From Octopus sinensis (lineage: Eukaryota): a stretch of 64,000 bases of DNA. The stretch's first letter is position 1. Each line of letters starts with the position of its first letter. The DNA is taken from contig NC_043012.1 of NCBI RefSeq assembly GCF_006345805.1, forward strand, positions 7,502,001 through 7,566,000. Reading direction: 5' to 3'. Position numbers and translations under genes: made by a program. Positions 16,646 through 64,000 of this stretch are shown here, piece by piece. The notes below the pieces were generated by a model. That model worked only from the letters and a program-made list of their open reading frames with translations, was not told the DNA's origin and did not search any database.

Positions 16646-17039
16646 TCTTTATATATAAAAGTGAAGTTGTGTGTCTGTCTCCTACGATTTAGATTCCTAA
16701 CTACTCCCACATTTTGCGATGCAGTTTAACCAAAACCGGGTATCTTATAGTCGTGATTCATATCGAGCCCTTCTGGGTATTAGCGCGCGTCTACGATGAG
16801 TCTACGATTAAAAAAAAAAATTACCATCATTTTTTCCATTTTAATGCATTTTTTCGCTAGTATATAAGGGAAGTAACTCTCTAAAACTGTCTACGATGAG
16901 TCAACGATTTAAAAAAAAATTTACCATAATTTTTTTTCCATTTTTAATGCATTTTTTGCTATTTTTTGGCTATAACTCTAAAAATGCTTATATAGTTATT
17001 TCCCTTACAAACCCGAGCAACGCCGGGCGATACTGCTAG
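16646..17039 (+). mobile_element. Non-autonomous Helitron (~394 bp)
   Basis: Starts A|TC, ends CCCGAGCAACGCCGGG...CTAG|T; AT insertion site, no TSD. Confidence 0.85.
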
Positions 17040-18438: not shown

Positions 18439-18471
<33 letters not shown>

Positions 18472-18510
18472 ATACTACTACTACTACTACTAATAATATA
18501 ATAATAATAA

Positions 18511-19070: not shown

Positions 19071-19159
19071 TATAATAATAATAATAACTCAGAACGTAGC
19101 GACGGCATTTCGTCCGGCGTGCTAACATTTCTACCAGTTCACTACCTGAACCAATAATA

Positions 19160-22258: not shown

Positions 22259-22358
22259 NNNNNNNNNNNNNNNNNNNNNNNNNNNNNNNNNNNNNNNNNN
22301 NNNNNNNNNNNNNNNNNNNNNNNNNNNNNNNNNNNNNNNNNNNNNNNNNNNNNNNNNN
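22259..22358. other. Assembly gap (100 N)
   Basis: Run of exactly 100 N, typical of a placeholder of unknown size. Confidence 1.
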
Positions 22359-25264: not shown

Positions 25265-25565
25265 TCTTTATATATAAAAGTGAAGTTGTGTGCTGTCTGT
25301 CTCCTACGATTTAGATTCCTAACTACTCCCACATTTTGCGGTGCAGTGTAACCAAAAGCGGGTATCTTATAGTCGTGATTCATATCGAGCCCTTCTGGGT
25401 ATTAGCGCGCGTCTACGATGAGTCTACGATTTAAAAAAAATTTACCATAATTTTTTCCCATTTTTAATGCAATTTTTTGCTATTATATAAGGGAAGTAAC
25501 TCTCTAAAAATGCTTATATAGTTTTTTCCCTTAAAAACCCGAGCAACGCCGGGCGATACTGCTAG
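25265..25565 (+). mobile_element. Non-autonomous Helitron, shorter variant (301 bp)
   Basis: A|TC...CTAG|T termini; lacks one internal duplicated segment present in the other copies. Confidence 0.85.
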
Positions 25566-26269: not shown

Positions 26270-26549
26270 TACAATACTGTAAGTTTGAATGATTATGATC
26301 ATAGTATCGCGAGACCGAGATTATATGTCAAGTTGTTACTTTCCCATTATTTTGCTGGATAATATGGTTTTTTTTTTTTAATTTCTGTTTTCAGAAACGG
26401 ACGTCAGAAAGTTTATGAAAACAGGAAAACTGAATGGGAATAAAATTTCAAATAAGAAAAAAAAAACGGATGAAAGTAAGCTTGAAGAATGACGAAGCAA
26501 CGAGGTTTAACAGCTGACTGTAATTAGCGTGTATGTTCTGGTTTTGTTA

Positions 26550-26960
26550 GGCGCAGGAGTGGCTGTGTGGTAAGTAGCTTGCTAACCAACCACATGGTTC
26601 CGGGTTCAGTCCCACTGCGTGGCATCTTGGGCAAGTGTCTGCTGCTATAGCCCCGGGTCGACCAATGCCTTGTGAGTGGATTTGGTAGACAGAAACTGAA
26701 AGAAGCCTGTCGTATATATGTATATATATATATGTGTGTGTGTGTATATGTTTGTGTGTCTGTGTTTGTCCCCCTAGCATCACTTGACAACCGATGCTGG
26801 TGTGTTTACGTCCCCGTCGCTTAGTGGTTCGGCAAAAGAGGCCGATAGAATAAGTACTGGGCTTACAAAGAATAAGTCCCGGCGTCGATTTGCTCGACTA
26901 AAGGCGGTGCTCCAGCATGGCCGCAGTCAAATGGCTGAAACAAGTAAAAGAGTAAAGAGT
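26550..26960 (+). mobile_element. SINE family 2
   Basis: Full-length copy with head GCGCAGGAGTGGCTGTGTGGTAAG and tail (AAAAGAGT)n. Confidence 0.88.
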
Positions 26961-27985
26961 AAAAAGGGAGTAATGATATCGGATGGCTTGTTAATTCATC
27001 AAATACATTAGCATTTGATCTTAATGTTTTTGTTAAGTGTTACACACTTTCAGTAAATTATGATTTCACAGGGGACGCAAAAGGAGATTCCGTTGTGTGG
27101 ACTATTTTATTGCCAAAGACTCGCCATGGCTTGTCTCTTCTTCATAGATGAAAGAATCATCTGTATGTGCTTATCTTTTTTCAGTCTTTGAACCGTGGCC
27201 TTGCTGGGGCACTGCCTTGAAGGGTTTAGGTCAAAGAAATCGCCCCAAGTTCTTACTTTATTTTTTAAAGTTTAGTACTTATTTTATCGGTCTCTCTTTT
27301 GCTGGGCCGCTAAGTTACACGAGTGTAAACAACCTAACACCGGTTTTCAAGTGGGGGGCGCAGAAATACAGACAGAAAGACATACACACGCACGTATACA
27401 TATGTATATTTATATATACGACATACGAACATATGACGATCTTCCACAAAGCTTCTGTCTACCACATTCACTCATAAAGCACTGGTCGGCCCAGGGCTAT
27501 AATGGTAAATAATTGCCCGAGCTGCTGTGCTACCGGACTGAACACGAAACTATATTTTTCCACAGCCTGGATCTCAACGTGGATCTTTGCGTGTATTTGT
27601 CGTCACACCTTTTAGGAATTCTAATGACTTCCATCACTGTGCAATTAATCATATACCAAGAAAGCCGCAGTGAAATTCCCAAGAGTTTGCGGTACATTTT
27701 CTGGCCATCAGAAACCAACCAGAAAAGAGCGTCGTACGTCAGTTTGACAATTCTGTAAAACGACTTGAGGGGCATCAAAAAGGAATTATTTTCAAAATCT
27801 TATCTATTTGGTGCCCCTGATGTTTTATAATCGGAGCAGGGACAGGGGACAGAAGTATTACAGCTGGAAATGTATAAAGAGTCTGTACAAGTTCCATATT
27901 GAAGAAAAAACAATCATTCACATCAGTAGTTCGCAACCATTTTTTTTATCTATAACCTCTTTGATAACTATTTTATTTCATGTCC

Positions 27986-34800: not shown

Positions 34801-35218
34801 AGGTGCAGGAGTGGCTGTGTGGTAAGTAGCTTGCTAACCAACCACATGGTTCCGGGTTCAGTCCCACTGCGTGGCATCTTGGGCAAGTGTCTTCTGCTAT
34901 AGCCCCGGGCCGACCAATGCCTTGTGAGTGGATTTGGTAGACGGAAACTGAAAGAAGCCTGTCGTATATATGTATATATATATATATATATATGTATATG
35001 TGTGTGTGTGTGTCTGTGTTTGTCCCCCTAGCATTGCTTGACAACCGATGCTGGTGTGTTTACGTCCCCGTCACTTAGCGGTTCGGCAAAAGAGCCCGAT
35101 AGAATAAGCACTGGGCTTACAAAGAATAAGTCCCGGGGTCGATTTGCTCGACTAAAGGCGGTGCTCCAGCATGGCCGCAGTCAAAATGACTGAAACAAGT
35201 AAAAGAAGAGTAAAAGAG
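34801..35218 (+). mobile_element. SINE family 2
   Basis: Full-length copy. Confidence 0.88.
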
Positions 35219-39270: not shown

Positions 39271-39323
39271 GTTTGTCATGGTTAACTGGTTAAGGTCAAA
39301 CAACTTTATTATTATTATTATTA

Positions 39324-39879
39324 TTGAGTGAGAGAGCAGTTCATGCCATCAAAGTGACACTGGGGTAAAATATACGAAGCCCAATATACCCATCATGACT
39401 ACCCGTCTGATAAAGGTACACCAGGCACATGCATCACAACCATATGTGCGCGACATGGTGATCTCATATCAAGATAAACAGCACATGACCTTGCAGGTGG
39501 GGCCCAGTTAGAATTTTCTTCATGTTGAGTAGCCCATCCCGCTCAAACGGTCCCTGAATAAGGGTTGTTTAAGGATGTTGAAAGAACCACCCATGTTTCC
39601 AGAGGTGAACTATTCAAACCCCAAAGAATCCCTCTCAACACATGGCTATGATGCTCCCCCACTACTTCTGCTCGTGATCAGAGATGCACATATCGTCAGC
39701 CACTTAGGGACATGCTCAACTGGTTAAGGTCAAACAACTGACAAGCAAATCTGTGGTATTGAGCAGAATATTTGCTGTAGCCCATCTTTTATACCAAGAC
39801 AAAACAATGTACATGATAACACTTCCAATCAGTTAAGATCAGAAGCCATGAGAGCCACTGCCTGGTACTGCATCAGGGC

Positions 39880-39881
<2 letters not shown>
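39324..39881 (-). mobile_element. Second copy of the (AAT)n-inserted ~560-bp element
   Basis: Reverse complement of 18511-19070, flanked by (TTA)n. Confidence 0.8.
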
Positions 39882-39930
<49 letters not shown>

Positions 39931-48197: not shown

Positions 48198-48662
48198 GTA
48201 TATGCGTGCGTGTACTGACGTTTGCTGGTTCTAAAGTGGCAACAATTAAAAACATCTCATCCACCCATTGAAAAGAGATGCGTTCGTTCACTCACACTCA
48301 CACCAACACCCACCTTCCACTCACAACATCCACCTTCCACTCACCCACCTACACTCATGCATTCATCTTTAGCCATTAGCCATATACGACAAGTCTTTAC
48401 ATGAACCTTGCACCGACCCACACCCCCGCTACACCAATCAAGCCTGTTTTACTGAAATAGTACGGGTACATTTCAGATATACGACGTTTCATGGGTGGGA
48501 GTAAAGGTGTGGCGGGTAGGTGTGTGTGTGTGCACGTATTTTGTTCGAGTATACAATTGCACGTGAAGGCGTTTATTGAAAGGCCTGCTTTGAGATGATA
48601 CATATTCATCACGCGCATTCGAACACACACACGCACTAACACGAATATATACACGCATGATA

Positions 48663-48694
<32 letters not shown>

Positions 48695-49140
48695 TACACA
48701 CACACACACACATACACACACACACACACCACACCCACACACACACACCACACACACACACTCGCACACACATACACACACACACACACATAAGTATGTA
48801 TGTATATTATACATAAACGCACAATTATTCATCTGCATGTATACGTATGTATATATTATACGTGTGTACACACATACACACAAACACACACAAATGTATA
48901 CAAAATGTATTTCATATATGTCTATATATATGTATATTTATGTGCGCGTGTGTATATGCATGTATGTATATATATATATATTATATAATATATATATATA
49001 TATATAATATATTATGATATATATATATAATATACATATATATCATATATATATTATATATATGCATGTACACACATTCACATATTTTGCGTGTATGTAT
49101 ATACTGTATTGCTGTTGTGTATATATATAATATAATAATC

Positions 49141-49171
<31 letters not shown>

Positions 49172-49592
49172 GAGATAATTAATATATATATATTATACAT
49201 TGTATGTTTGCATGTTTGTGTACCCATATACATGCATGTATGCATGTGTGTGTGTGTGTGTGTTGTGTGTGTGTGTGTGTGAGTATACTTACACATGTGA
49301 GTGTGATTGTGCGAGGTCAGAGATCTGATAAGCAGAGCCCTATTACTAAGTAACCCTGTAAACCAATACAACCTGTGCACGTTCGAGCGCCAGTGGCGAC
49401 CCAACTCCGTATGGGGTGGGGATGACATTTTAAACACCCAGCTGGATGAAAACTGCGAAACTAGTCAAAGGACAGATGATATCAAGTCAATAAACCGTCA
49501 TCCAATATTTTGACATAACTGTATGAGCGTGATTATACGTGTAATAAGTAAATGCACGCGAAAAAGGATCCTTTTGTTTGAAATCCGCAATA

Positions 49593-50221
49593 CAGTGATC
49601 CCTCGCTACTTTCGCGGATCAACTATCGCGGATTCATGTCTTCGCGGATTTTTTAAATATGTATATGAACGCCTAAAATTTTTCATTAAATCCATTAAAA
49701 TATTAATAATTAATAATAAATATTATTTCCTAGTCTAGGAACGACAAAACAAGCGTAAAATAGCAAACAGCATATACAGGGATATTTGAACTTAAGACGG
49801 GCTGTGATTGGTGCAATGGAGAGAGGCGACGAATCTCGGCTTTCTATTTTGTAATCTGGCCTGTGTAACAGTAACAATCTTTATTTTTTTTAAATCTTAA
49901 TTTATCGACCCCGAAGGATGAAGGCAAAGTCGACCTCGGCGGATTTGAACCCACAACGTAACGACGAGGAAATACCTATTTCTTTATTACCCACAACGTA
50001 AACACAGAGGGGACAAACAAGACTACAGGTATTAAGTCGATTACATCGACCCCAGTGCGAACTGGTACTTAATTTATCGCCCACGAAAGGATTAAAGGCA
50101 GTCGACCTCGGCGGAATTTGAACTCATTTCGCGACCGAAATACTTGCATTTCGCCCGACGTGCTAACGTTTCTTCATCTCGCCTCGGAACCAATCTACCA
50201 CGTATAATCGAGGGATCACTG
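49593..50221. mobile_element. pogo/Tigger-like MITE with a nested family 1 SINE (about 49895-50185)
   Basis: TIRs CAGTGATCCCTCG / CGAGGGATCACTG, TA TSDs at 49591-49592 and 50222-50223. Confidence 0.82.
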
Positions 50222-50852
50222 TATTTCGTGGTCTCTGGTCATTTTGTACTCTTTGCATCATTTTTGTTTAAAGACTGTTGAATAGCTTCAGATATGTTGT
50301 GAGAGGTTCGCATGAGGCATAATCTCGTTTGTTACCTTCAAATTTGATTAAATTGTTGTTGTTTTTTTCTTTTTTTACTTCTTTGATTTTGACTTGTTTC
50401 GATCTTGGATTGAGGCCATACTGGAGGAACACCGACCTGAAACGTCAATCCGAACAAATCGACCACTAGTACTTGTTAGAAATTAAAGTCTGGTGCTTAG
50501 GTGCTTATTTTATCGGGGTTTTTGTTTTTGGCGGGGGGTGTTTTTGCTTTTACTGAACCGCTAGATTACGAGGACGAAAACAAACATTTACCGATCGTCA
50601 AGCAGTTGTGGAGTACAAACACAATCACGAAGAGACGCACACACACATACGTATATATGTATATTTGCATAGATGTGTAAATGTGTGTGTGTGTGTGTGC
50701 GTGTGTGTGTGTGTGTGTGTATGTGTGTTGTGTGTGTGTGTGTGTGTGTGATATTTTAATATAATCTGTGTAAAGATCTTATAGCGTGCGTTTCAAAGCT
50801 CCTTTCTAGTATCGGCCACCAAGTGCTGTCATTCTCTGGGACTTCTATCACT

Positions 50853-50989
50853 GGATAAAATGCATGCCGGATAAAATGCACGCCGGATAAAATGCATGCC
50901 GGATAAAATGCATGCCGGATAAAATGCATGCCGATAAAATGCATGCCGAATAAAATGCATGCCGGATAAAATGCATGCCGGATAAAATG
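50853..50989. repeat. 16-bp tandem repeat GGATAAAATGCATGCC, about 8.5 copies
   Basis: Directly visible array with minor variants. Confidence 0.95.
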
Positions 50990-51482
50990 GTGAGCGCCTT
51001 ATGATTCGAATTCAAATACCCGCAGGTTCGACTTTCGTCTTTCAGAGTCGATGAAATAAGTATTAGTTTAGCACTAAGGACCAAGGTCGATATAATCGAC
51101 TCTTCCCTACCCCGAAAAACCTCAGGTCCTCTGCATATAATAGAAAGTATGTGTGTGTGTGTGTATTCTTTTATACGTTTCAGCTCTAGAGCTGTAGCTA
51201 TGCTAGGGTACGGTCAGCGAAAATATACGACAAAATATCAGTGCCTCGGGTAAAGTTCGAACTCACAACCTCCGCATTCTTCATCCGTAACTCACACAGC
51301 GAAGGTACTGTGTATAAGTGCGGAATGCTAACTGATTGTGCCACTGGGACACATTATTTAAAATAGTTCGATTCGGCTCCTTGCGACTTAAAGTTTCGCG
51401 GGTCTCTGACATAAGATATGGAAGCCAAAGCAAACTTTTTAAATAATACATGTGTTGAATGACTTTTTCTTTCATTTTTCCA

Positions 51483-51546
<64 letters not shown>

Positions 51547-51571
51547 TACACACACATATATAGATACATAC

Positions 51572-51619
<48 letters not shown>

Positions 51620-51826
51620 ATATATGTATATATACATACACATATACATACGTATATATGTATATATATATGCATATATATATGCATATATAATGTACAT
51701 ATATATGTATATATATTTATGTATGTATATACATATATATGTGTGTATATATATGTATATATATATTGTGTGTATATATATGTATGTATGTATATATATA
51801 TATGCATATATGTATATTATACATAT

Positions 51827-51894
<68 letters not shown>

Positions 51895-52607
51895 TATATA
51901 ATATATATATATACATACTATATACATATACTCAATATAAATACCGTTAATAAGATAGGCTGTTTATAGCCATGACACATTTTTAGTCAAATTTCGAAAT
52001 TTTTCAAAAATTTAAAACCTATATTAACGGGTAGGACCAATTTGACGAAAGAATGAGCAGGAGTCCGGTAGCGAACCCGTGTCGTCGTCATTTTTGCGCA
52101 TGTGCGTAAATTGGCGAAATTTTACACTTTGGGGCAGATATCGTCAAATTGATGTCATGATAGCTTGTGCGAAAAAATGCCTAAATTTTGCTTGAGAAAT
52201 AAAATGCTCTCTCTTACCTAATCAAAATGTCGGGGATTTAAAACAACGAATTGAATTAGTAAGTTTTAGCAAATCGAAACAATTCGCATTGGAATGAAGA
52301 ATTAGCAAACGCTAAATAGATTACCGTTAATAAGCTCTGTCTGTGTATATCCATGAAACATTTCTCGTCAAATTTCGGCATTTTTTTGTCCAAATTGATG
52401 TCACGATGGCGAGCGCGAAAAATGCCGGAAATTTACGATTTTTGAAAAATCGATGTTGATTAAAAATCGATACTGATCAAATACCAATTTTTTACAAAAT
52501 TCCAAGTGCGAAAGTGACCGCATGGGCATAAGCCACGCACGTGGGTCAAGTTTCATCAAGGTTTCGGAAGAGTTAAAGTAACAAATTCACAAAGACACAA
52601 ACTTGCC

Positions 52608-52656
<49 letters not shown>

Positions 52657-52679
52657 TTAGTATTATATATATATATATC

Positions 52680-52986
52680 ACCGTGACCGACCAGGCTATC
52701 AGATGTTGCTACACATCGCTGGTCACAATGCGCTTAGCATTGGTTTGGTAGCCTTCGAATGACGTCACCCCGCGCTGGCTACGCGAGCAGGCCAACAGAA
52801 ACAAGAGTGAGAAAAAGTTGTGGCGAAAGAGTTCAGCAGGAATCGCCACCACCCTTTGCCAGAGCCTCGTGGAGCTTTTAGGTGTTTTCGCTCAATAAAC
52901 ACGCACAACGCCGCCCGGTCTGGGAATCGAAAGCGCGATCCTACGACCGCGAGTCCGCTGCCCTAACCTTGGGCTATTGCGCCTCC
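52680..52986 (-). mobile_element. SINE family 3 variant
   Basis: Family 3 head at about 52860-52986 with a different tail. Confidence 0.7.
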
Positions 52987-53101
52987 ACACACACACACAC
53001 ACACACAACACACCCACACCACACAATATATATATTATATATATATATATTGTGTGTGTGTATATATATATATATGGATATATATATATGATATATATAT
53101 G

Positions 53102-53160
<59 letters not shown>

Positions 53161-53176
53161 TATATATATGTATAAA

Positions 53177-53255
<79 letters not shown>

Positions 53256-53614
53256 GGGCAAATAAGAAAATGGAGAGGGTACGAAAACGACATACATCAA
53301 CCGGTAGACATTCTAGTATGTCTATTTATTCCAAAGTATTAGAAGTATTAGAGGAATACATACACATGTAATAACTGTGTCTTACACACACGTGTACTAA
53401 TATTATAGAAAAGAGCAAAGAGCAGATGACAGCAGGTGCTAGTTCCTACGCCGTTTCTGCGAAGACGTAACGAAATCCTCCATGCCATCTCCATCTCCTC
53501 AGTGTTCTGTAGGGATGGGCAGGTAAAGCTTGGATGACGAATGTGCCTCTAGGCTTCTTCAGAGGGTCTAAGTTGTTGGGAGGGTAATACATATAAGAAT
53601 ATAACAATATATAT

Positions 53615-53661
<47 letters not shown>

Positions 53662-53849
53662 TGTGTGTGTGTGTGTGTGTGTGTGTATTTATGTATGTAT
53701 ATATATATGTATGTATATATATCTAAAATATATATATATATATATATATATATTCACACACACACACATATATATAGATACATAGATATATATAGTGTAT
53801 GTATATATATATATATGTATATATGTGTATTATATATGTATATATATGT

Positions 53850-53905
<56 letters not shown>

Positions 53906-53938
53906 TAATATATATAGATAGATAGATAGATGATAGAT

Positions 53939-53973
<35 letters not shown>

Positions 53974-54207
53974 TGATAGATAGATATATACATACATACA
54001 TATAAATGACGCAGCACAGTTATTTAGAAAGCAAGTCTGGACACGCTTCTTTTATAGCAATAACGGTCCATCAGCGATCGGGTATAGGATGGCGAATATT
54101 TGATTCTGCCTGAGTGCCTGTCGGTAGAGACATAGAATCATAGGCGCACGCGCTCACACATACACGCATACATACATACATATGTGTGTGTATGTGTGTA
54201 TGTATAT

Positions 54208-54263
<56 letters not shown>

Positions 54264-54471
54264 TTGTAAAAAATGAAGTTCGAAAATGCTGCTGTATTAT
54301 ATAATTTTTAATTTTTATATATACATTATAACATGTTTCAGTTCCTGAAATGAACCTTATCAAAAAAAGTTATATATAAAAAAAGATAGCTCATGCCGTC
54401 AAACACAAGAAATTCATTTATAATACACAACGGAGTCAGACATCTTAGAGTTCATGTATAGTTGATATATA

Positions 54472-54620
54472 GACGTCATCAACTTGTTGACCAATCAGAA
54501 TCGGGTCTGACCCTTAGCTGTATCGTATGTATCAGGGTCAGATTTGCACGAAAGAATTTTTTTCCTTTTTTACTAAGGCATATTTCCGTCAGAGTGAGTG
54601 TCTGTTTGAAGCAGCGGCCG
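54472..54620 (+). promoter_or_regulatory. Possible promoter (CRE-like, CCAAT box, short inverted repeat) upstream of the SAMHD1-like cluster
   Basis: GACGTCA at 54472-54478, CCAAT at 54491-54495, TCTGACCCT/AGGGTCAGA inverted pair at 54506-54542, then a CpG-richer stretch. Motif evidence only. Confidence 0.25.
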
Positions 54621-54730
54621 TGGTGGAACCCCGCTTCTCCCTTTCGGAGGACTTATCTTTTGTTTTAGTATTCCTGGCCAGGGTGTTTAAACTTGGTCTA
54701 AATATATATATATATATATATATATCTATC

Positions 54731-54761
<31 letters not shown>

Positions 54762-54769
54762 TATATATA

Positions 54770-54806
<37 letters not shown>

Positions 54807-54828
54807 TATATATATATATATATATATA

Positions 54829-55228
54829 CTAGCAGTATCGCCCGGCGTTGCTCGGATTTGTAAGGGAAATAACTATAAAGCATTTTTAGAGAGTTATAGC
54901 CAAAAAATAGCAAAAAATGCATTAAAAATGGAAAAAAAAATTAAGGTAAATTTTTTATTAAATCGTTGACTCATCGTAGATATTTTTAGAGAGTTACTTC
55001 CCTCTATATTAAAAAAATATGCGTTAAAATGGAAAAAAATGATGTTAAATTATTTTTAAAATCGTAGACTCATCGTAAACGCGCGCTAATACCCAGAAGG
55101 GCTCGATATGAATCCCGACTATAAGATACCCGGTTTTGGTTAAACTGCATCGCAAAATGTGGGAGGAGTTAAGAATCTAAATCGTAGGAGACAGCCACTC
55201 ACACAACTTCACTTTTATATATATAACA
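54829..55228 (-). mobile_element. Non-autonomous Helitron H1
   Basis: Minus-strand 3' end is a GC-rich palindromic motif followed by CTAG|T. The 5' terminus reads TG instead of TC. Same family as 16646-17039. Confidence 0.85.
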
Positions 55229-55414
55229 TTACGCGCATACATTTACATACATCTATTCATTCACACAACACACCACACACACACAACACGCGCGCGCGCA
55301 TACATACACATGCACACACACACACACACATACATACACATGCACACGCGTATACATGTGTGAAACAACGGACTTTTCTGCGCAGAAGTTAAATCCGAAT
55401 GTGATACTTGTACG

Positions 55415-55463
<49 letters not shown>

Positions 55464-55464
55464 A

Positions 55465-55561
<97 letters not shown>

Positions 55562-55922
55562 GATATTATTAAATGTTATTGCTAGTGATGTTGAAGATGT
55601 AAAGTGAAAGTTGTGTTATAAGGAAGTGGGTTTAGTCGTCAGCTGATTGTTCATAGAGCAACGTAGTTCATTTCGTGTTCTTTCTACCAACCACGCAGAC
55701 ACTTTCTGATCGCTTATATTATTTGTAACACCAGATATTTCATGCCAATGCGACTGAGATCATTTCAAATCAAGTATTAGAAATATTCAACTGGACATAT
55801 CTGGATAATTTATATTTCTACTCCACATTACAAAACTAACAAAAACAACAGCAACGAAACGACCGCCAGCAACATAAACGACAAAGTAAATGTAAGTTAG
55901 ATATATTCTTAACAATTTTATA

Positions 55923-57947
55923 ATGTCTGAAACAGAAGGTAAACTTCCAAAGGATGAACCTCCAAAGGATAAATCTCCGGATAAATCTCCGGATAAATCT
56001 CCGGATAAATCTCCGGATAAATCTCCGGATAGGGTTTTTCACGACGCTATTCATGGATCCATGCAATTTTCACCAATCTGTGTTGATATTATTAATACAG
56101 TACAATTTCAGAGATTACGTAATATCAAACAACTAGGTTTGTGTTATTACGTTTATCCATCAGCTTCACATAATAGATTTGAGCATTGTCTGGGAACATG
56201 TCATCTAGCTGGGAAAATGATTCGCCATCTTAAACAGCAAAATCCCGATCTGGAAATATCTGATGAAGATATACTGTGTGTTGAAATCGCTGGTTTGTGT
56301 CATGATTTAGGACATGCGCCTTTTTCTCATGTCTTTCAAGAAATTATCAACGAGTGTCGCAATGGAGATGAAAAGTGGGAACATGAAGTTGCATCATGTG
56401 AAATGTTGGAGCATCTTTTTAAAAAGAACCCACATATAAAAGTTAAGCGTGATGAAATTGAATTCATAAAAGGTCTCATTACTGGTAAACCAATAAAAAC
56501 TGAGGAACAAAAATTTGAAAAAGAAAAAAATGTTCTCATTACTGGTGAATCAAAAAAAACTGAGAAAAAAAATTTAAGAAGAAAAAAACAATTTTTTTAC
56601 CAAATCGTCAACAATGCAGACTATAACATCGACGTTGATAAATGGGATTACCTGGCCAGAGATTCCCATTTGCTTGGCATTGGAACATCCTTTGATCACG
56701 AAAGAATGCTGAAAATGTCCAAAGTAATAGATGGTAAAATATGCTACAGAGACAAAACGCTTAAAAATTTCTATGATATGTTTTATTCACGATATCGACT
56801 ACATAACACGGTTTACCAACACAAAACTGTTCTCCTGCTTAATAAACTACTTGGCAAGGCTTTGAAATCCGCAGATGAACACCTGAAAATTTTCAAAAGA
56901 GTCGAAAATATGGAGGAATTTACTTATTTTACAGATAGTATTTTGGAGGAGATATTAAAGAATAAGGGCAATCAATCTCTCAAAGACTCGGAGAAATTTA
57001 CTTCTTTTATAGAGAGTATTTTGGAGGAGATATTAAAGAATAAGGACAATCAATCTCTCAAAGACTCGGAGAAATATACTTCTTTTATAGAGAGTATTTT
57101 GGGGGAGATATTAAAGAATAAGAGCAATCAATCTCTCAAAGACTCGGAGAAATTTACTTCTTTTATAGAGAGTATGTTGGAGGAGATATCAAAGGAGAAG
57201 GGCAATCAACCTCGCAAAAACTTGGAGACTATAATCAACCGGTCTTTTGAATACAAAGGGACCGTCACAGACACAATCACGGGCACAGTCACGGATATAT
57301 TCGAACTCGGAGATACGGAGGGAAATATCTTGTACCCAGCTGAGGGTACAAGAGATGACGTTGCAGCCCTGGAAAACATGGAGGACATTATCAATGGTAA
57401 AACCTTGGACACACCGGAGAGCAAAATGTGGAGAAATATCAAGGGTGAAATCAAGGCTAAAATCTCGGACACCCCGGGGAGCGAAATGCAGGGCAATATC
57501 CAGCGCAGAATCAATGGTACAATCTCGGAGACATCGGGAGAAAAAAAGATCGAGGGCACAATCGATGTTGAAATAGTGAGAAAATCGGAGAGCATAATGC
57601 AGTGGGATATCAAGGGCAAAATCAATGGTAAAATATCGGGCACATCGGAGAGCAAAATGCAGAGCAATATCAAGGGCGAAATCGAGGGTACCATCCAAAC
57701 AATAATAAACAGCAGAGACGAAGAATCAGAGCCGGTTATAGCCAATGAGACAGACGAGATCTGCATAGCCCGTTTTGACTATGGAGCTAAAGAAAAGAAC
57801 CCACTATTGAACATACCATTCTATAGAAGAATGGGAACTAAGTCAATGTACTTTAAACAGGAAGAACTGGAAGATATGCTTTTTCTGCCAAAGAAATTTA
57901 AAATGGAAACCGGACATTGTTTTGAATTTAAAAAAAAAAAACAATGA
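55923..57947 (+). CDS. SAMHD1: SAMHD1-like HD-domain dNTP triphosphohydrolase, copy 1 (674 aa, no SAM domain, internal repeat expansions)
   Basis: Uninterrupted ORF with motifs HDAIHG, FQRLRNIKQLG, SHNRFEH, CHDLGHAPFSH, WEHE, IDVDKWDYLARD, RYRLHNTVYQHK and DYGAKEKNP. The true start is uncertain because of an in-frame splice acceptor at 55934-55935. Confidence 0.95.
   Translation: MSETEGKLPKDEPPKDKSPDKSPDKSPDKSPDKSPDRVFHDAIHGSMQFSPICVDIINTVQFQRLRNIKQLGLCYYVYPSASHNRFEHCLGTCHLAGKMIRHLKQQNPDLEISDEDILCVEIAGLCHDLGHAPFSHVFQEIINECRNGDEKWEHEVASCEMLEHLFKKNPHIKVKRDEIEFIKGLITGKPIKTEEQKFEKEKNVLITGESKKTEKKNLRRKKQFFYQIVNNADYNIDVDKWDYLARDSHLLGIGTSFDHERMLKMSKVIDGKICYRDKTLKNFYDMFYSRYRLHNTVYQHKTVLLLNKLLGKALKSADEHLKIFKRVENMEEFTYFTDSILEEILKNKGNQSLKDSEKFTSFIESILEEILKNKDNQSLKDSEKYTSFIESILGEILKNKSNQSLKDSEKFTSFIESMLEEISKEKGNQPRKNLETIINRSFEYKGTVTDTITGTVTDIFELGDTEGNILYPAEGTRDDVAALENMEDIINGKTLDTPESKMWRNIKGEIKAKISDTPGSEMQGNIQRRINGTISETSGEKKIEGTIDVEIVRKSESIMQWDIKGKINGKISGTSESKMQSNIKGEIEGTIQTIINSRDEESEPVIANETDEICIARFDYGAKEKNPLLNIPFYRRMGTKSMYFKQEELEDMLFLPKKFKMETGHCFEFKKKKQ
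55968..56027 (+). repeat. Coding 12-bp repeat (GATAAATCTCCG)x5 encoding (DKSP)5
   Basis: Directly visible; absent from copy 2. Confidence 0.95.
56917..57213 (+). repeat. Coding 78-bp (26-aa) tandem repeat, about 3.8 copies, in copy 1
   Basis: Unit starts at 56917, 56995, 57073 and 57151; copy 2 has a single unit. Confidence 0.93.
57408..57698 (+). repeat. Coding ~60-bp (20-aa) degenerate repeat, 5 units (copy 2 has 4 units at 61645-61875)
   Basis: Units 60/60/51/60/60 bp with consensus DT(P/S)ESKMxxNIKGxIxGxIS. Confidence 0.85.
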
Positions 57948-58496
57948 AGACAACATTCAAGAGAAAAATCAATAACAAAAAATCAGATTGATTATAACCA
58001 ATGAAAGAAAACAAAACCATGGACGCAGATTGAGATAAGTAATGAAACTTGATAAAACTTTAATATTATAAAAATACATTGAAACTATTGAAAGATTGAT
58101 AGGTCAAAAATACTAAATGGACAATATTCTCTATCTAAATTAAAAGAACTTTTTGATGGGAAATTTTTACTTTTAAGAAACTCTCAAAATTAAAAAAAAA
58201 AAAAAAACATATATTTCCTTACTTCTAAATTGAATCCTCCCATTGAGTCACGTTCGAAACATATGAGAAACATTTATTCTTTACTTAAAATTTGGTAAGA
58301 ATTAATTTTTTTTTTAAATATATTGAAACTATTTCAAAATTCAAAGACTAAAAATAATATGCGAACAACAATTTTTTCCTAAATTAACTTTTTTTTTACT
58401 TTTCTATTAGAAATATTCTTTGTTTACCAAATAATGTATTTCTTACATTCAAAAATTATAACCTCTCACTGAGTCATGTGTGTATGTGTATGTATG

Positions 58497-58539
<43 letters not shown>

Positions 58540-58545
<6 letters not shown>

Positions 58546-58770
58546 TTTGCGAGATTTTTTATGTGAAATCGTGTGTTGAAACATATATTGTTGTATTTAG
58601 GAATGGTCATTTTGCTAGTTTAGCCAATAAAAACACACGCACTATATATTTGGTTTTACTTTGCTTCATCGTTATTTATTTTTTACATTAATCTTAATCT
58701 TATTTCGGCCAGAGTTCTTTCGTCACACTCCTGTGACCGCATCACTGGTCCTTTGCTTTCTTCTTTCTTA
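58540..58770 (-). mobile_element. Penelope-like relic with a decayed hammerhead-like motif (duplicated at about 62720-62950)
   Basis: Minus strand CCA-GTGATGC-G-GTCAC(AGGAGT)GTGAC-GAAA-GAACTC-TGG; the core is mutated. Confidence 0.4.
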
Positions 58771-59016
58771 TTTGTGTGTCTCTCCTTACTAACCGTCAAC
58801 CATTTTGTATTTCTATTGTATGTGTCTTCATTTGCGCATGCGTATATCTCTATGTGCGTCTATGCTTAGTTAGTGTGTGTGTGTGTATATGTATGGGGGG
58901 GGAAACGCCTGTAATATTTGTATCTCCTGTTTATATACGTTCGTGTAATTTGTTTTTGTTTTTGTTTATTCTTATTTTGTTCATGTGTTTATACCCACTT
59001 ATTATTATTATTATTA

Positions 59017-59071
<55 letters not shown>

Positions 59072-59336
59072 CATTATTATTATTATTATGCATGTATGTA
59101 TATATGTATAACAATAATAATAGTAATAATAGTAATAAATATAAATAAAATTTTTAAAAAATAAAAATAAAAATAAATGAAATAAAAAATATATGTATAT
59201 AGTTATTTACTTCCATTTGTTTATTAGAAGGTTTGGAGATGATGTACAGGTATTTTATATTAGAAGAAATGAGGTACTCAGAATTCGGATGGTTTTATAT
59301 TTACAGATATTTATTTGTATATTACATGTTTTTATA

Positions 59337-59740
59337 CTAGCAGTATCGCCCGGCGTTGCTCGGGTTTGTAAGGGAAATAACTATATAAGCATTTTTAGAG
59401 TGTTATAGCCAGAAAAAAAAAAAAAAAAATGCATTAAAAATGGAAAAAAAATTAAGGTAAATTTTTTTTTTAAATCGTTGACACATCGTAGATATTTTTA
59501 GAGAGTTACTTCCCTCTATATTAAAAAAATATGCGTTAAAATGGAAAAAAATGATGTTAAATTATTTTTAAAATCGTAGACTCATCGTAGACGCGCGCTA
59601 ATACCCAGAAGGGCTCGATATGAATCCCGACTATAAGATACCCGGTTTTGGTTAAACTGCATCGCAAAATGTGGGAGGAGTTAAGAATCTAAATCGTAGG
59701 AGACAGCCACTCACACAACTTCACTTTTATATATATAACA
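59337..59740 (-). mobile_element. Non-autonomous Helitron H2 (chimera of H3-left and H1-right)
   Basis: Same family; diagnostic bases switch from H3-type to H1-type between about 59484 and 59516. Confidence 0.88.
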
Positions 59741-59769
59741 TTACGCGCATACATTTACATACATCTATT

Positions 59770-59814
<45 letters not shown>

Positions 59815-59934
59815 GCATACATACACATGCACACACACACACACACATATACATACACATGCACACGCGTATACATGTGTGAAAACAACGGACTTTTCTG
59901 CGCAGAAGTTAAATCCGAATGTGATACTTGTACG

Positions 59935-60024
<90 letters not shown>

Positions 60025-60025
60025 A

Positions 60026-60057
<32 letters not shown>

Positions 60058-60058
60058 A

Positions 60059-60115
<57 letters not shown>

Positions 60116-60525
60116 ACTACTACTACTACTACTACTACTACTCGATATTATTAAATGTTATTGATAGTGATGTTGAAGATGTAAAGTGAAAGTTGTGTTA
60201 TAAGGAAGTGGGTTTAGTCGTTAGCTGATTTTTCATAGAGCAACGTAGTTCATTTCGTGTTCTTTCTACCAACCACGCAGACACTTTCTGATCGCTTATA
60301 TTATTTGTAACACCAGATATTTCATGCCAATGCGACTGAGATCATTTCAAATCAAGTATTAGAAATATTCAACTGGACATATCTGGATAATTTATATTTC
60401 TACTCCACATTACAAAACTAACAAACACAACAGCAACGAAACGACCACCGGGAACATAAACGACAAAGTGAATGTAAGTTAGATATATTCTTAACAATTT
60501 TATAATTGCTGACGCAGAGGTTATA

Positions 60526-62124
60526 ATGGCTATGGCAAACAAAACACGTTCGGTTCGGGTTTTTCACGACGCTATTCATGGATCCATGCAATTTTCACCA
60601 ATCTGTGTTGATATTATTAATACAGTACAATTTCAGAGATTACGTAATATCAAACAACTAGGTTTGTGTTATTACGTTTATCCATCAGCTTCACATAATA
60701 GATTTGAGCATTGTCTGGGAACATGTCATCTAGCTGGGAAAATGATTCGCCATCTTAAGCAGCAAGATTCCGATCTGAAAATATCTGATGAAGATACACG
60801 TTGTGTTGAAATCGCTGGTTTGTGTCATGATTTAGGACATGCGCCTTTTTCTCATGTCTTTCAAGAAATTATCAATGAGTATCGCAAGGAAAAAAACCTT
60901 AAAAAGTGGGAACATGAAGAGGCATCATGTAAAATGTTGCAGCAGATTATTGACAAGAACTCATGTATTAAAGACAAACTTGGTGACAAGTCTGATGAAA
61001 ATATTTGTTTCATAAAAAGTCTCATTACTGGTAAACCAGGAGATCTTAAGAAACCAAATTTTTTTTACCAAATCGTCAACAATGCAGACTATAACATCGA
61101 CGTTGATAAATGGGATTACCTGGCCAGAGATTCCCATTTGCTTGGCATTGGAACATCCTTTGATCACGAAAGAATGCTGAAAATGTCCAAAGTAATAGAT
61201 GGTAAAATATGCTACAGAGACAAAACGCTTAAAAATTTCTATGATATGTTTTATTCACGATATCGACTACATAACACGGTTTACCAACACAAAACTGTTC
61301 TCCTGCTTAATAAACTACTTGGCAAGGCTTTGAAATCCGCAGATAAACACCTGAAAATTTTCAAAAGAGTCGAAAATATGGAGGAATTTACTTATTTTAC
61401 AGATAGTATTTTGGAGGAGATGTTAAAGAAGGGCAATGAACCTCTCGAACACTTGGAGACTATAATCAACCGGTCTTTTCACTACAAAGGGACCGTCACA
61501 GACATAATCAAGGGCACATTCACGAGCCCAGTCACGGACATATTCGAACTCGGAGATACGGAGGGAAAAATCTTGGACCCAATTGAGGGTACAAGAGAAG
61601 ACGATGCAGTCCAGGAAAAAATAAATATATATGGTGAAAGCTTGGACACACCGGAGAGCGACATGCAGGACAATATCCAGCGCAGAATCAGTGGTACAAT
61701 CACGAAGAAATCGGAAAAAAAAAAGATCGAGGGCACAATCGATGTTAAAAAATTTGACCAAGGGGATGGCAAAATGCGGTGGGATATCGATGGCACAATC
61801 AATGGTAAAATATTGGGCACATCGGAGAGCAAAAGGCAGAGAAATATCGATGGCAAAATCAATGGTACCATCGAAACAATAATAAACAGCAGAGACGAAG
61901 AATCAGAGCCGGTTATAGCCAATAAGACAGACGAGATCTGCATAGCCCGTTTTGACTATGGAGCTAAAGAAAAGAACCCACTATTGAACATACCATTCTA
62001 TAGAATAATGGGAAATAAGCCAATGTACTTTAAACAGGAAGAACTGGAAGATATGCTTTTTCTGCCAAAGAAATTTAAAATGGAAACCGGACATTGTTTT
62101 GAATTAAAAAAAAAAAAACAATGA
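60526..62124 (+). CDS. SAMHD1: SAMHD1-like HD-domain dNTP triphosphohydrolase, copy 2 (532 aa, no SAM domain)
   Basis: Same catalytic motifs as copy 1 with long nucleotide-identical blocks; different N-terminus and fewer internal repeats. Confidence 0.95.
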   Translation: MAMANKTRSVRVFHDAIHGSMQFSPICVDIINTVQFQRLRNIKQLGLCYYVYPSASHNRFEHCLGTCHLAGKMIRHLKQQDSDLKISDEDTRCVEIAGLCHDLGHAPFSHVFQEIINEYRKEKNLKKWEHEEASCKMLQQIIDKNSCIKDKLGDKSDENICFIKSLITGKPGDLKKPNFFYQIVNNADYNIDVDKWDYLARDSHLLGIGTSFDHERMLKMSKVIDGKICYRDKTLKNFYDMFYSRYRLHNTVYQHKTVLLLNKLLGKALKSADKHLKIFKRVENMEEFTYFTDSILEEMLKKGNEPLEHLETIINRSFHYKGTVTDIIKGTFTSPVTDIFELGDTEGKILDPIEGTREDDAVQEKINIYGESLDTPESDMQDNIQRRISGTITKKSEKKKIEGTIDVKKFDQGDGKMRWDIDGTINGKILGTSESKRQRNIDGKINGTIETIINSRDEESEPVIANKTDEICIARFDYGAKEKNPLLNIPFYRIMGNKPMYFKQEELEDMLFLPKKFKMETGHCFELKKKKQ

Positions 62125-62675
62125 AGACAACATTCAAGAGAAAAATCAATAACAAAAAATCAGATTGATTATAACCAATGAAAGAAAACAAAACCATGGA
62201 CGCAGATTGAGATAAGTAATGAAACTTGATAAAACTTTAATATTATAAAAATACATTGAAACTATTGAAAGATTGATAGGTCAAAAATACTAAATGGACA
62301 ATATTCTCTATCTAAATTAAAAGAACTTTTTGATGGGAAATTTTTACTTTTAAGAAACTCTCAAAATTAAAAAAAAAAAAAAACATATATTTCCTTACTT
62401 CTAAATTGAATCCTCCCATTGAGTCACGTTCGAAACATATGAGAAACATTTATTCTTTACTTAAAATTTGGTAAGAATTAAATTTTTTTAAAATATATTG
62501 AAACTATTTCAAAATTCAAAGACTAAAAATAATATGCGAACAACAATTTTTTTCCTAAATTAACTTTTTTTTTTTACTTTTCTATTAGAAATATTCTTTG
62601 TTTACCAAATAAATGTATTTCTTACATTCAAAAATTATAACCTCTCACTGAGTCATGTGTGTATGTGTATGTATG

Positions 62676-62722
<47 letters not shown>

Positions 62723-63195
62723 TTTGCGAGATTTTTTATGTGAAATCGTGTGTTGAAACATATATTGTTGTATTTAGGAATGGTCATTTTGCTAGTTTAG
62801 CCAATAAAAACACACGCACTATATATTTGGTGTTACTTTGCTTCAGCGTTATTTATTTTTTACATTAATCTTAATCTTATTTCGGCCAGAGTTCATTCGT
62901 CACACTCCTGTGACCGCATCACTGGTCCTTTGCTTTCTTCTTTCTTATTTGTGTGTCTCTCCTTACTAACCGTCAACCATTTTGTATTTCTATTGTATGT
63001 GTCTTCATTTGCGCATGCGTATATCTCTATGTGCGTCTATGTTTAGTTAGTGTGTGTGTGTGTATATGTATGGGGGGGGGAAAACGCCTGTAATATTTGT
63101 ATCTCCTGTTTATATACGTTCGTGTAATTTGTTTTTGTTTTTGTTTATTCTTATTTTGTTCATGTGTTTATACCCACTTATTATTATTATTATTA

Positions 63196-63259
<64 letters not shown>

Positions 63260-63528
63260 CATTATTATTATTATTATTATGCATGTATGTATATATGTAT
63301 AACAATAATAATAGTAATAATAGTAATAAATATAAATAAAATTTTTAAAAAATAAAAATAAAAATAAATGAAATAAAAAATATATGTATATAGTTATTTA
63401 CTTCCATTTGTTTATTAGAAGGTTTGGAGATGATGTACAGGTATTTTATATTAGAAGAAATGAGGTACTCAGAAATTCGGATGGTTTTATATTTACAGAT
63501 ATTTATTTGTATATTACATGTTTTTATA

Positions 63529-63926
63529 CTAGCAGTATCGCCCGGCGTTGCTCGGGTTTGTAAGGGAAATAACTATATAAGCATTTTTAGAGTGTTATAG
63601 CCAGAAAATAGCAAAAAAATGCATTAAAAATGGAAAAAAAATTAAGGTAAATTTTTTTTTTAAATCGTTGACACATCGTAGATATTTTTATAGAGTTACT
63701 TCCCTTATATAATAGCGAAAAAATGCATTAAAATGGAAAAATATGATGGTAAATTTTTTTTAAATCGTGGACTCATCGTAGACGCGCGCTAATACCCAGA
63801 AGGGCTCGATATGAATCACGACTATAAGATACCCGGTTTTGGTTAAACTGCATCGCAAAATGTGGGAGCAGTTAGGAATCTAAATCGTAGGAGACAGACA
63901 CACAACTTCACTTTTATATATAAAGA
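63529..63926 (-). mobile_element. Non-autonomous Helitron H3
   Basis: Intact A|TCTTTATATATAAAAG 5' end and CTAG|T 3' end on the minus strand; the right flank is unique sequence. Confidence 0.88.
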
Positions 63927-64000
63927 TATAAGCCACGTAGTTATATACACATACTTTGTTATATACACATTCTTAAAAGAAAATGTTATTTTGAACACAA

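What the first reader, a model, noticed from the sequence alone, without database searches (positions are those of the whole stretch)
54829..63926. SAMHD1-like gene duplicated by unequal crossover between two Helitrons, with the breakpoint visible in a chimeric middle element
Seen: the arrangement is H1-X1-H2-X2-H3, with unique sequence left of H1 and right of H3. The left part of H2 matches H3 (ctcggGttt, aactatAtaag, agTgttatagccaG, gacAcatcg at 59483). The right part of H2 matches H1 (ccctctatattaaaaaaatatgcg, gaatcCcg, gggagGagttaAg, acagccactcac, TG terminus). The free copy at 16646 shows that shared bases on both sides include derived states. The switch maps to about 59484-59516. Inference: non-allelic homologous recombination between flanking Helitrons amplified a candidate restriction-factor gene and could keep generating copy-number variation.
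Basis: partly seen in the sequence, partly recalled or inferred. Interest (0 to 1): 0.85.

Follow-up and report, generated by a model that had tools for sequence, protein, structure and literature searches.

The report
Helitron-flanked tandem duplication of octopus SAMHD1-like gene
Two copies of an octopus SAMHD1-like (dNTP-degrading, possibly antiviral) gene sit in tandem between three copies of a small Helitron transposon, and the middle Helitron is a clean hybrid of the outer two, as recombination between transposon copies would leave; this is a tidy example of a known mechanism, not yet checked against raw reads.

Summary
The layout is H1 (54829-55224), X1, H2 (59337-59736), X2, H3 (63529-63926). 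H2 matches H3 on its left and H1 on its right. There is one switch, which I narrow to 59484-59500.

The ~395-bp repeat has Helitron hallmarks: A|TC...CTAG|T ends, a weak subterminal hairpin, no target-site duplication and no inverted ends. Both ORFs (674 and 532 aa) are intact, intron-less SAMHD1-type HD proteins without a SAM domain.

New evidence: the public Octopus vulgaris reference (OX597828.1, 48.33 Mb) carries the same locus as one unit, Ha-X-Hb. Ha is H1-type throughout and Hb is H3-type throughout, so both parents of the hybrid are visible.

Complications:
- The reference copy equals X2, while X1 is a mosaic: 0-1% divergence in places and 10-28% in coding patches. Non-synonymous changes are in strong excess.
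- This fits old alleles joined by unequal crossover, or an old duplication with gene conversion. It equally fits two alleles falsely joined by an assembler, which only reads can settle.
- The gene belongs to a Helitron-associated tandem array on another chromosome, and homology to that array stops exactly at Helitron ends.

This is a known kind of event and of moderate interest.

The parts
54829..55224 (-). H1: non-autonomous Helitron copy (Ha type). Its CTAG 3' end is at 54829; its 5' end is truncated.
55225..59336 (+). X1: first duplicated unit. It comprises a 5' region with CA and CTA microsatellites, the ORF, and a 1.4-kb 3' non-coding part.
55923..57947 (+). ORF p1, 674 aa: a SAMHD1-type HD protein with no SAM domain, carrying in-frame repeat expansions.
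56912..57228 (+). In-frame 78-bp minisatellite, 4.1 copies in X1 and one copy in X2. Other in-frame arrays lie at 55967-56031 (12 bp x5.4), 56474-56588 (60 bp x2) and 57390-57690 (60 bp x5.2).
55860..56600 (+). Hypervariable patch A of X1 (X2 equivalent about 60440-61060). Divergence is 10-28%, with both synonymous and non-synonymous differences.
57200..57830 (+). Hypervariable patch C of X1 (X2 equivalent about 61430-62000), in the repeat-rich insert of the C-terminal lobe. Per-60-codon dN is 0.09-0.25 against dS 0.02-0.05.
59337..59736 (-). H2: chimeric Helitron. The left part (59337-59483) is Hb/H3-type and the right part (59501-59736) is Ha/H1-type.
59484..59500 (.). Switch interval: a 17-bp tract identical in Ha and Hb, inside which the recombination junction lies.
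59737..63528 (+). X2: second duplicated unit. It differs from the single copy in the O. vulgaris reference by about 0.4%.
60526..62124 (+). ORF p2, 532 aa: a SAMHD1-type HD protein. It has 2 amino-acid differences from O. vulgaris protein P0001.
63529..63926 (-). H3: complete Helitron copy (Hb type). CTAG is at 63529 and TC at 63926, flanked by A and T.
16646..17039 (+). Independent complete copy of the same Helitron family, used as outgroup.
25265..25565 (+). Independent copy of the family with only one of the two internal ~100-bp units.

Best explanation
**The event.** A module of one SAMHD1-like gene (X) lay between two directly oriented copies of a ~395-bp non-autonomous Helitron. Ha is an old copy upstream of the gene and Hb a younger copy downstream. 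The module was duplicated in tandem by recombination between Hb of one chromatid or homologue and Ha of the other.

**The junction.** It lies in a 17-bp identical tract (59484-59500). It left a single hybrid element, H2, that is Hb-type on its left and Ha-type on its right.

**What is shown.**
- The structure and the hybrid element.
- The existence of the un-duplicated Ha-X-Hb arrangement in another assembly.
- Both ORFs are intact and carry all the aligned HD catalytic motifs.

**What is inferred.**
- That the join happened in the animal and not in the assembler.
- That the event joined two already divergent versions of the gene. This could be unequal crossover between homologues carrying old alleles, or an older duplication kept partly uniform by gene conversion with the reference haplotype having lost X1.
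- That the proteins are dNTP triphosphohydrolases whose variable surface patches evolve under diversifying selection, as expected of a factor in conflict with viruses or retroelements.

**Consequence.** With H1/H2 and H2/H3 now sharing identical stretches, further gain and loss of units is expected.
For: **Structure.**
- The informative sites split perfectly.
- The public O. vulgaris reference locus L002 has one gene and two Helitrons. ref_Ha is H1-type and ref_Hb is H3-type over their full lengths.
- Flanks of the window and of L002 differ by 0.5-1.2% substitutions, so the two loci are allelic or sister-taxon versions of each other.
- H1 and H2 share a derived A (55172/59684) where ref_Ha has G.
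- The region sits in a gap-free stretch of at least 41 kb; the only N run is at 22259-22358.
- No other duplication of this kind occurs in the window.

**Protein.**
- Pfam HD scores 1e-12 and 1e-11, and HD_assoc_2 also matches.
- Human SAMHD1 is hit at E 6.6e-75, with the HD...D motif stretches identical.

**Selection.**
- dN/dS between the copies is 1.9, with synonymous differences in deficit (binomial p = 0.008).
- The C-terminal patch has 3 synonymous changes out of 58 (p = 0.001).
- Polarised with the array gene, N:S is about 15:1 on both branches.

**Precedent.** Transposable elements of the DNAREP1 family sit at the breakpoints of new Drosophila gene duplicates (PMC2211543).
Against: - **No read-level evidence.** An assembler that chained two alleles through the Helitron would produce the same chimeric H2.
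- **Allele-like divergence.** In the 3' non-coding 1.4 kb, X1, X2 and the reference copy are about equally distant (11, 10 and 9 differences), like three alleles. In the 5' half of the gene the tree is (X1,(X2,ref)), not ((X1,X2),ref) as a simple recent intrachromosomal duplication would give.
- **Mosaic ancestry.** Synonymous divergence is 13/107 sites in codons 1-240 against 3/202 in the rest (p = 1e-4). Extra events are therefore needed.
- **Short, imperfect homology.** Ha and Hb are only 90.5% identical, and the junction tract is 17 bp while longer tracts (48 and 34 bp) were not used. This is short for classical NAHR.
- **No independent trace of p1.** The p1-type protein is absent from the protein collection and from the exact-product look-ups.
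Confidence: 0.65

Rival explanations
1. Assembly artefact. The animal carries one Ha-X-Hb unit per chromosome but two very different alleles, a p1-type and a p2-type. The assembler placed both in tandem by joining Hb of one haplotype to Ha of the other through their similarity.
For: - X1 and X2 differ in neutral parts by about as much as either differs from the reference haplotype.
- The reference has a single copy of the X2 type.
- The assembly is scaffolded (100-N gap) and comes from a heterozygous marine invertebrate.
- The chimeric H2 is equally expected from an overlap join.
Against: - The join would rest on about 400 bp at about 90% identity, inside a contig of at least 41 kb with long microsatellites resolved. 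Long reads spanning H into the true flanks would contradict such an overlap (inference; reads not seen).
- No gap or other haplotype-type duplication lies nearby.
- It still requires alleles that differ by 142 residues and by 10-28% in patches.
Confidence: 0.25
2. The duplication is real but was made by a replication-based template switch (microhomology or homeology-mediated, as in many Alu-Alu rearrangements) and not by a meiotic crossover.
For: The junction tract is only 17 bp, the repeats are 90.5% identical, and longer identical tracts were not used.
Against: - The junction is in perfect register, with no inserted or deleted bases.
- Crossover followed by mismatch repair can also leave a short apparent tract.
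- Sequence alone cannot separate the two mechanisms.
Confidence: 0.25
3. Helitron rolling-circle replication itself produced the tandem, as a concatemer of a composite element Hb-X-Ha.
For: - Helitron ends bound the module: homology to the paralogous array stops exactly at Helitron termini.
- Helitrons are known to form head-to-tail arrays (own knowledge).
Against: A concatemer would place a complete Ha next to a complete Hb at the junction. H2 is a single element-length hybrid with one in-register switch.
Confidence: 0.03

Closest known systems
Repeat-mediated unequal recombination (NAHR / Alu-Alu-mediated rearrangement) causing tandem gene duplication and copy-number variation
   Same: Directly oriented dispersed repeats flank the duplicated segment. 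The junction repeat is a hybrid with a single in-register switch. A single-copy arrangement with both parental repeats exists.
   Different: The repeats are Helitrons in a cephalopod, only 90.5% identical, with a 17-bp junction tract. The two copies carry a mosaic of deep and shallow divergence.
DNAREP1 (DINE-1, Helitron-related by own knowledge) elements at the breakpoints of new gene duplicates in Drosophila (PMC2211543)
   Same: A short, abundant non-autonomous element family flanks new gene copies. Either NAHR or mobilisation by the element was proposed as the mechanism.
   Different: Those were mostly dispersed, often chimeric duplicates without a preserved hybrid element. Here the tandem product and its hybrid junction are intact.
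Human SAMHD1 (dNTP triphosphohydrolase, retroviral restriction factor)
   Same: The HD catalytic domain and the HD-associated region align at E 6.6e-75, and the metal-binding and catalytic motif stretches are conserved. Like primate SAMHD1 (own knowledge), the octopus copies show an excess of amino-acid change.
   Different: - There is no SAM domain and the gene is intron-less.
- A 100-240 residue repeat-rich insert sits in the C-terminal lobe.
- The residue aligned with human D137 (numbering from own knowledge) is Asn.
- The gene belongs to a lineage-specific family of at least 10 members.
- Activity and any antiviral role are untested.
Helitron gene capture by read-through of the 3' terminator (maize, bats)
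   Same: The gene lies between a Helitron 5' end (Hb) and a downstream Helitron 3' terminator (Ha) on the same strand. Homology to the paralogues on another chromosome stops exactly at Helitron termini.
   Different: Captures described so far are mostly gene fragments. Here the gene would be whole and selected. No donor unit with Hb and no empty site has been seen.

Membership tests
Helitron (non-autonomous) | 5' end TC and 3' end CTRR | tested here: met
   H3, the 16646 copy and the 25265 copy start with TC. The array and O. sinensis Ha copies keep an ATCTC end. All 5 window copies end in CTAG. H1 and H2 have lost the TC end.
Helitron (non-autonomous) | Insertion between host A and T, without target-site duplication or terminal inverted repeats | tested here: met
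   A precedes TC in 3 of 3 independent complete copies, and T follows CTAG in every copy. The flanks of the 25265 copy (CTGAAA / TCTCAT) show no duplication, and the ends are not inverted repeats.
Helitron (non-autonomous) | GC-rich hairpin 10-12 nt upstream of the 3' end | tested here: inconclusive
   CCCGAGCAACGCCGGG folds 12 nt before CTAG at -4.5 kcal/mol. This is no better than shuffles (z = -0.75).
Helitron (non-autonomous) | Empty site, or an autonomous Rep/helicase partner sharing the termini | not testable with these tools
   No nucleotide search of octopus genomes is available. Array units lack Hb, but the flank beyond it is not homologous. A second family with the same 3' terminus lies at L002 13590.
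SINE (rival classification of the repeat) | tRNA-, 5S- or 7SL-derived head, and target-site duplications | tested here: not met
   ARAGORN finds nothing. Rfam finds only microsatellite artefacts below threshold. There are no target-site duplications.
SAMHD1-type dNTP triphosphohydrolase | HD domain with the H...HD...D metal-binding motifs and the HD-associated region | tested here: met
   Pfam HD and HD_assoc_2 score above cut-off in both ORFs. The stretches SHNRFEH, CHDLGHAPFSH and DVDKWDYLARD align with the human motifs and are identical in p1 and p2.
SAMHD1-type dNTP triphosphohydrolase | N-terminal SAM domain | tested here: not met
   There is no SAM hit in Pfam, and the alignment to the human protein starts at the beginning of the HD domain. 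Many invertebrate 'SAMHD1-like' proteins also lack it.
SAMHD1-type dNTP triphosphohydrolase | dNTPase activity and antiviral restriction | not testable with these tools
   Needs enzyme and infection assays.
Repeat-mediated (NAHR-type) tandem duplication | Direct repeats at both ends, one hybrid repeat at the junction, and a parental single-copy arrangement | tested here: met
   hybrid; single-copy Ha-X-Hb in OX597828.1.
Repeat-mediated (NAHR-type) tandem duplication | Both copies present on one DNA molecule in the animal | not testable with these tools
   No reads are available, and exact-product look-ups for p1 and p2 found no other assembly.
Helitron-captured gene (composite Hb-X-Ha) | Copies at unrelated loci share boundaries that coincide with Helitron termini | tested here: inconclusive
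   The left boundary is exactly the Ha CTAG end, and the right boundary is exactly where the Hb CTAG end abuts. Only one dispersed copy is known, and the 6 array-type units examined (5 in O. vulgaris, 1 in O. sinensis) lack Hb.

The most novel reading that the evidence does not exclude
The whole module Hb-X-Ha may be a composite Helitron. On this reading, replication starting at the TC end of Hb read through Hb's own terminator, crossed an intact SAMHD1-like gene, and stopped at the terminator of the older Ha. This carried a complete, positively selected immune-type gene from the array on OX597824.1 to a new chromosome. The same Helitron ends then served as substrates for local amplification. 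Helitrons would thus both disperse and amplify a functional defence gene family in octopus.
Probability: 0.2. Interest if true: 0.7.

Novelty: new member of a known kind. Interest (0 to 1): 0.4.

Why it matters
If the duplication is real, it gives an unusually legible example in a cephalopod: both parental repeats, the hybrid junction and the un-duplicated arrangement are all visible. It shows abundant Helitrons acting as recombination substrates that change the copy number of a fast-evolving SAMHD1-like gene.

It also points to an unreported expansion of intron-less SAMHD1-like genes in Octopus, with at least 10 members, tandem arrays, and more amino-acid than silent change. That pattern is expected of genes in conflict with viruses or retroelements, and no antiviral function has yet been assigned to these genes in cephalopods.

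The mechanism itself is textbook, so the value is as a case study and a lead, not as a new principle.

Tried and rejected
1. **O. sinensis contig as orthologous single-copy locus: rejected.** Contig VCDQ01001856.1 (L001) looked at first like the orthologue. Its unit is about 1% from units of an O. vulgaris array on another chromosome and 6-7% from the window locus, so it is a paralogue.
2. **Clean empty site for H3: not found.** Array units lack Hb, but the sequence beyond it is unrelated to the window's right flank.
3. **Ectopic gene conversion as the source of X1's divergent patches: no donor found.** No sampled array unit matches closely; the best are 10-16% divergent in the patches.
4. **SINE classification of the repeat: rejected.** There is no tRNA or Rfam match.
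5. **Rfam miRNA/snoRNA hits: dismissed.** They lie in CA/TA microsatellites far below gathering scores.
6. **Exact-product look-ups for p1 and p2: nothing on record**. p2 differs from the reference protein by two residues.
7. **Rolling-circle concatemer origin: rejected** on the structure of H2.
8. **Ha upstream of more distant paralogues: absent.** Paralogues at 25.05 and 25.19 Mb on OX597824.1 lack Ha, so the association is limited to the long-type subfamily.
9. **Hairpin significance by shuffling: not significant**.


Full report
**1. What is there**

The last 9 kb of the window contain a tandem duplication.
- A repeat search, BLAST and global alignment show two collinear units, X1 (55225-59336) and X2 (59737-63528).
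- Each unit is preceded by a copy of a ~395-bp element, and a third copy closes the second unit: H1 54829-55224, H2 59337-59736, H3 63529-63926.
- The same element occurs twice more in the window on the other strand, at 16646-17039 and ~25265-25565.
- Left of H1 is a long TA-rich tract. Right of H3 is unrelated sequence.
- No other duplication of this scale exists in the 64 kb.
- The only run of N is 32 kb away, at 22259-22358.

**2. The repeat is best read as a non-autonomous Helitron on the minus strand**
- Independent complete copies (H3, the 16646 copy, the 25265 copy) begin with TC preceded by host A.
- All five copies end in CTAG followed by host T.
- The flanks carry no target-site duplication and the ends are not inverted repeats.
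- The 27-base 3' terminal motif occurs five times, against none expected from shuffles.
- A short GC-rich hairpin lies 12 nt before CTAG, but it is not stronger than shuffled sequence.
- There is no tRNA-like or other Rfam-type head that would suggest a SINE.
- A second family with the same terminal 30 bases but a different interior lies 220 bp right of Hb in the reference locus. This is typical of Helitron families (own knowledge).
- Helitrons are annotated in O. vulgaris, with an expansion dated to about 25 Myr (PMC13282606).
- I could test neither an empty site nor an autonomous partner.
Paralogous copies of the same insertion keep the TC end plus about 375 bp that are missing at the window locus.

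**3. The hybrid middle element**
- I tabulated every column where H1 and H3 differ and added the reference Ha and Hb, the array Ha and the 16646 copy as outgroups.
- All of about 8 independent events left of 59483 are H3-type in H2. All of at least 14 events from 59501 rightwards are H1-type.
- The exceptions are private changes: one in H1 at 55078 and a poly-A change in H2.
- A perfect split has a chance of about 3e-6.
- The shared states are derived on both sides.
- H3 and the reference Hb both carry T at the position where H2 and H1 carry G (59501). The junction therefore lies in a 17-bp tract, 59484-59500, that is identical in the two parents.
- Ha and Hb are 90.5% identical, and longer identical tracts (48 and 34 bp) were not used.

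**4. The genes**
- Both units hold one intact ORF: p1 of 674 aa (55923-57947) and p2 of 532 aa (60526-62124).
- Both match Pfam HD and HD_assoc_2 above threshold.
- p2 aligns to human SAMHD1 at E 6.6e-75; p1 was not searched against the solved structures.
- The motif stretches (SHNRFEH, CHDLGHAPFSH, DVDKWDYLARD) are preserved and are identical in both copies.
- There is no SAM domain, and the ORFs are single exons.
- A repeat-rich insert of 100-240 residues sits in the C-terminal lobe.
- X1 has expanded several in-frame minisatellites: 12 bp x5.4, 60 bp x2, 78 bp x4.1 and 60 bp x5.2.

**5. Where the window comes from, and the single-copy arrangement**
- The best protein hit, P0001 from Octopus vulgaris, differs from p2 by two residues.
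- Its locus (L002; GCA_951406725.2, OX597828.1, 48.33 Mb) is collinear with the window from 48313 to 64000. Substitution divergence is 0.5-1.2% in the flanks. The window is therefore another haplotype of O. vulgaris or of a very close relative.
- L002 has one gene and two Helitrons. Its left copy is H1-type over its whole length and its right copy is H3-type over its whole length.
- H1 and H2 also share a derived A (55172/59684) where the reference Ha keeps G.

**6. The two copies are not simple young duplicates**

A three-way comparison shows the reference copy is X2-type. It has 18 mismatches in about 4240 bp outside the Helitron left part, and 0-3 in the gene. X1 differs from both by about 200.

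The X1/X2 differences form a mosaic:

| X1 region | X1/X2 divergence |
|---|---|
| 3' non-coding, 1.4 kb | about 0.7% |
| 56590-56890 | about 0-1% |
| 5' non-coding | about 2% |
| patch A (55860-56600) | 10-28% |
| patch C (57200-57830) | 10-28% |

- In patch A both synonymous and non-synonymous sites differ (dS about 0.15).
- In patch C almost only non-synonymous sites differ. Per-60-codon dN is 0.09-0.25 against dS 0.02-0.05, and in the most extreme window (codon columns 541-600) there are 30 non-synonymous changes against 0.7 synonymous.
- Synonymous divergence is heterogeneous along the gene: 13/107 sites in codons 1-240 against 3/202 in the rest (p = 1e-4).
- Overall dN/dS is 1.9, and the synonymous deficit is significant (p = 0.008).
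- Polarised with the array gene, N:S is about 15:1 on both branches. That suggests diversifying selection on both versions.
- In the patches, X1, X2 and the array are about equally distant. No sampled array unit is a near-identical donor.

**7. Family context**
- O. vulgaris has many SAMHD1-like paralogues on OX597824.1 between 25.05 and 25.48 Mb.
- The long-type members form a tandem array with a period of about 7.3 kb.
- In that array every unit carries the same Helitron Ha, starting 1.2-1.5 kb upstream of the gene-homologous region.
- The O. sinensis contig I first took for the orthologue belongs to this array, at about 1% from its units.
- More distant short-type paralogues lack Ha.
- The window locus is 6-7% divergent from the array.
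- Its homology to the array begins exactly at the CTAG end of Ha and ends exactly at TTTTTATA, where the CTAG end of Hb abuts. The array spacer has no counterpart at the window locus.
- Ha is therefore an old part of the gene module. The module may have reached this chromosome as a composite Helitron (Hb, gene, Ha) by read-through capture. I rate this at about 0.2, because no donor with Hb and no empty site was seen.

**8. Explanation and rivals**

Best explanation (0.65): a real tandem duplication made by recombination between Hb and Ha.
- It either joined two old, divergent versions of the gene by unequal crossover between homologues, or it is older and has been partly homogenised by gene conversion. 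In the second case the reference haplotype has lost X1, or its assembly has collapsed it.
- The short junction tract means a template switch is as plausible as a crossover.

Main rival (0.25): a false tandem join of two alleles by the assembler.
- It predicts the same hybrid element and the allele-like divergence.
- Against it are the short, imperfect overlap it would need inside a long gap-free contig, and the absence of similar artefacts nearby.
- Only reads can decide.

A rolling-circle concatemer is excluded, because H2 is one element long and not Ha abutting Hb.

**9. Comparison with what is known**
- Repeat-mediated unequal recombination producing gene duplication and copy-number variation is well established.
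- DNAREP1-family elements, which I count as Helitron-related from own knowledge, flank new gene duplicates in Drosophila (PMC2211543).
- I found no paper on SAMHD1 expansion in cephalopods. SAMHD1 proteins are reported in O. vulgaris skin mucus (PMC11431876).

**10. Verdict**

The finding is a new, unusually clear member of a known kind. The leads most worth following are the rapidly evolving, Helitron-associated SAMHD1-like family and the possible Helitron-mediated transfer between chromosomes.

Noticed in passing
L002 5728-8296 (reference) versus window ~54224-54269: A 2.57-kb element with perfect ~42-bp terminal inverted repeats and a reverse-transcriptase-like interior. It is present about 0.6 kb left of Ha in the O. 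vulgaris reference and absent from the window, so it is a transposon insertion difference between the two haplotypes.
   Followed up: partly
L003 and L004 (OX597824.1, 25.40-25.48 Mb): A tandem array of SAMHD1-like genes with a period of about 7.3 kb. Each unit carries the same Helitron Ha upstream. Units differ by about 1% from each other and from an O. sinensis contig. Several reference copies appear frame-shifted in the repeat region.
   Followed up: partly
L005 and L006 (OX597824.1, 25.05 and 25.19 Mb): More distant, shorter SAMHD1-like paralogues without the C-terminal repeat insert and without Ha. The family spans at least 430 kb of one chromosome.
   Followed up: partly
L002 13590-13630: A second Helitron-like 3' terminus (CTAGCAGAATTGCCCGGCGTTGCTCGGGG) with a different interior, 220 bp right of Hb in the same orientation. 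The locus is a nest of Helitron insertions.
   Followed up: no
window 22259-23068: A 100-N scaffold gap (22259-22358) is followed directly by a short tandem repeat (22359-22884 matches 22546-23068 at 97%). This is possibly a gap-edge artefact.
   Followed up: no
window 54882-55080, 59414-59592, 63605-63782: The Helitron itself contains an internal tandem duplication of about 100 bp. The copy at ~25265-25565 has only one unit.
   Followed up: partly
window 55415-55560 and 59935-60142: A (CTA)n microsatellite in the 5' region of the gene has 49 repeats in X1 and 70 in X2. A (TTA)n array at 58999-59089 and 63178-63280 also differs by 12 bp.
   Followed up: no
window 11896-12308, 26549-26962, 34806-35218; 18470-19087 versus 39306-39923: Other dispersed repeat families of about 410 and 620 bp at about 95% identity. 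They were not classified.
   Followed up: no
p1 residue ~57, p2 residue ~31 (IINTVQFQRLR): The residue aligned with human SAMHD1 D137, the guanine-specific contact of allosteric site 1 (numbering from own knowledge), is Asn in both octopus copies and in the paralogues. This may mean a different activator specificity.
   Followed up: no
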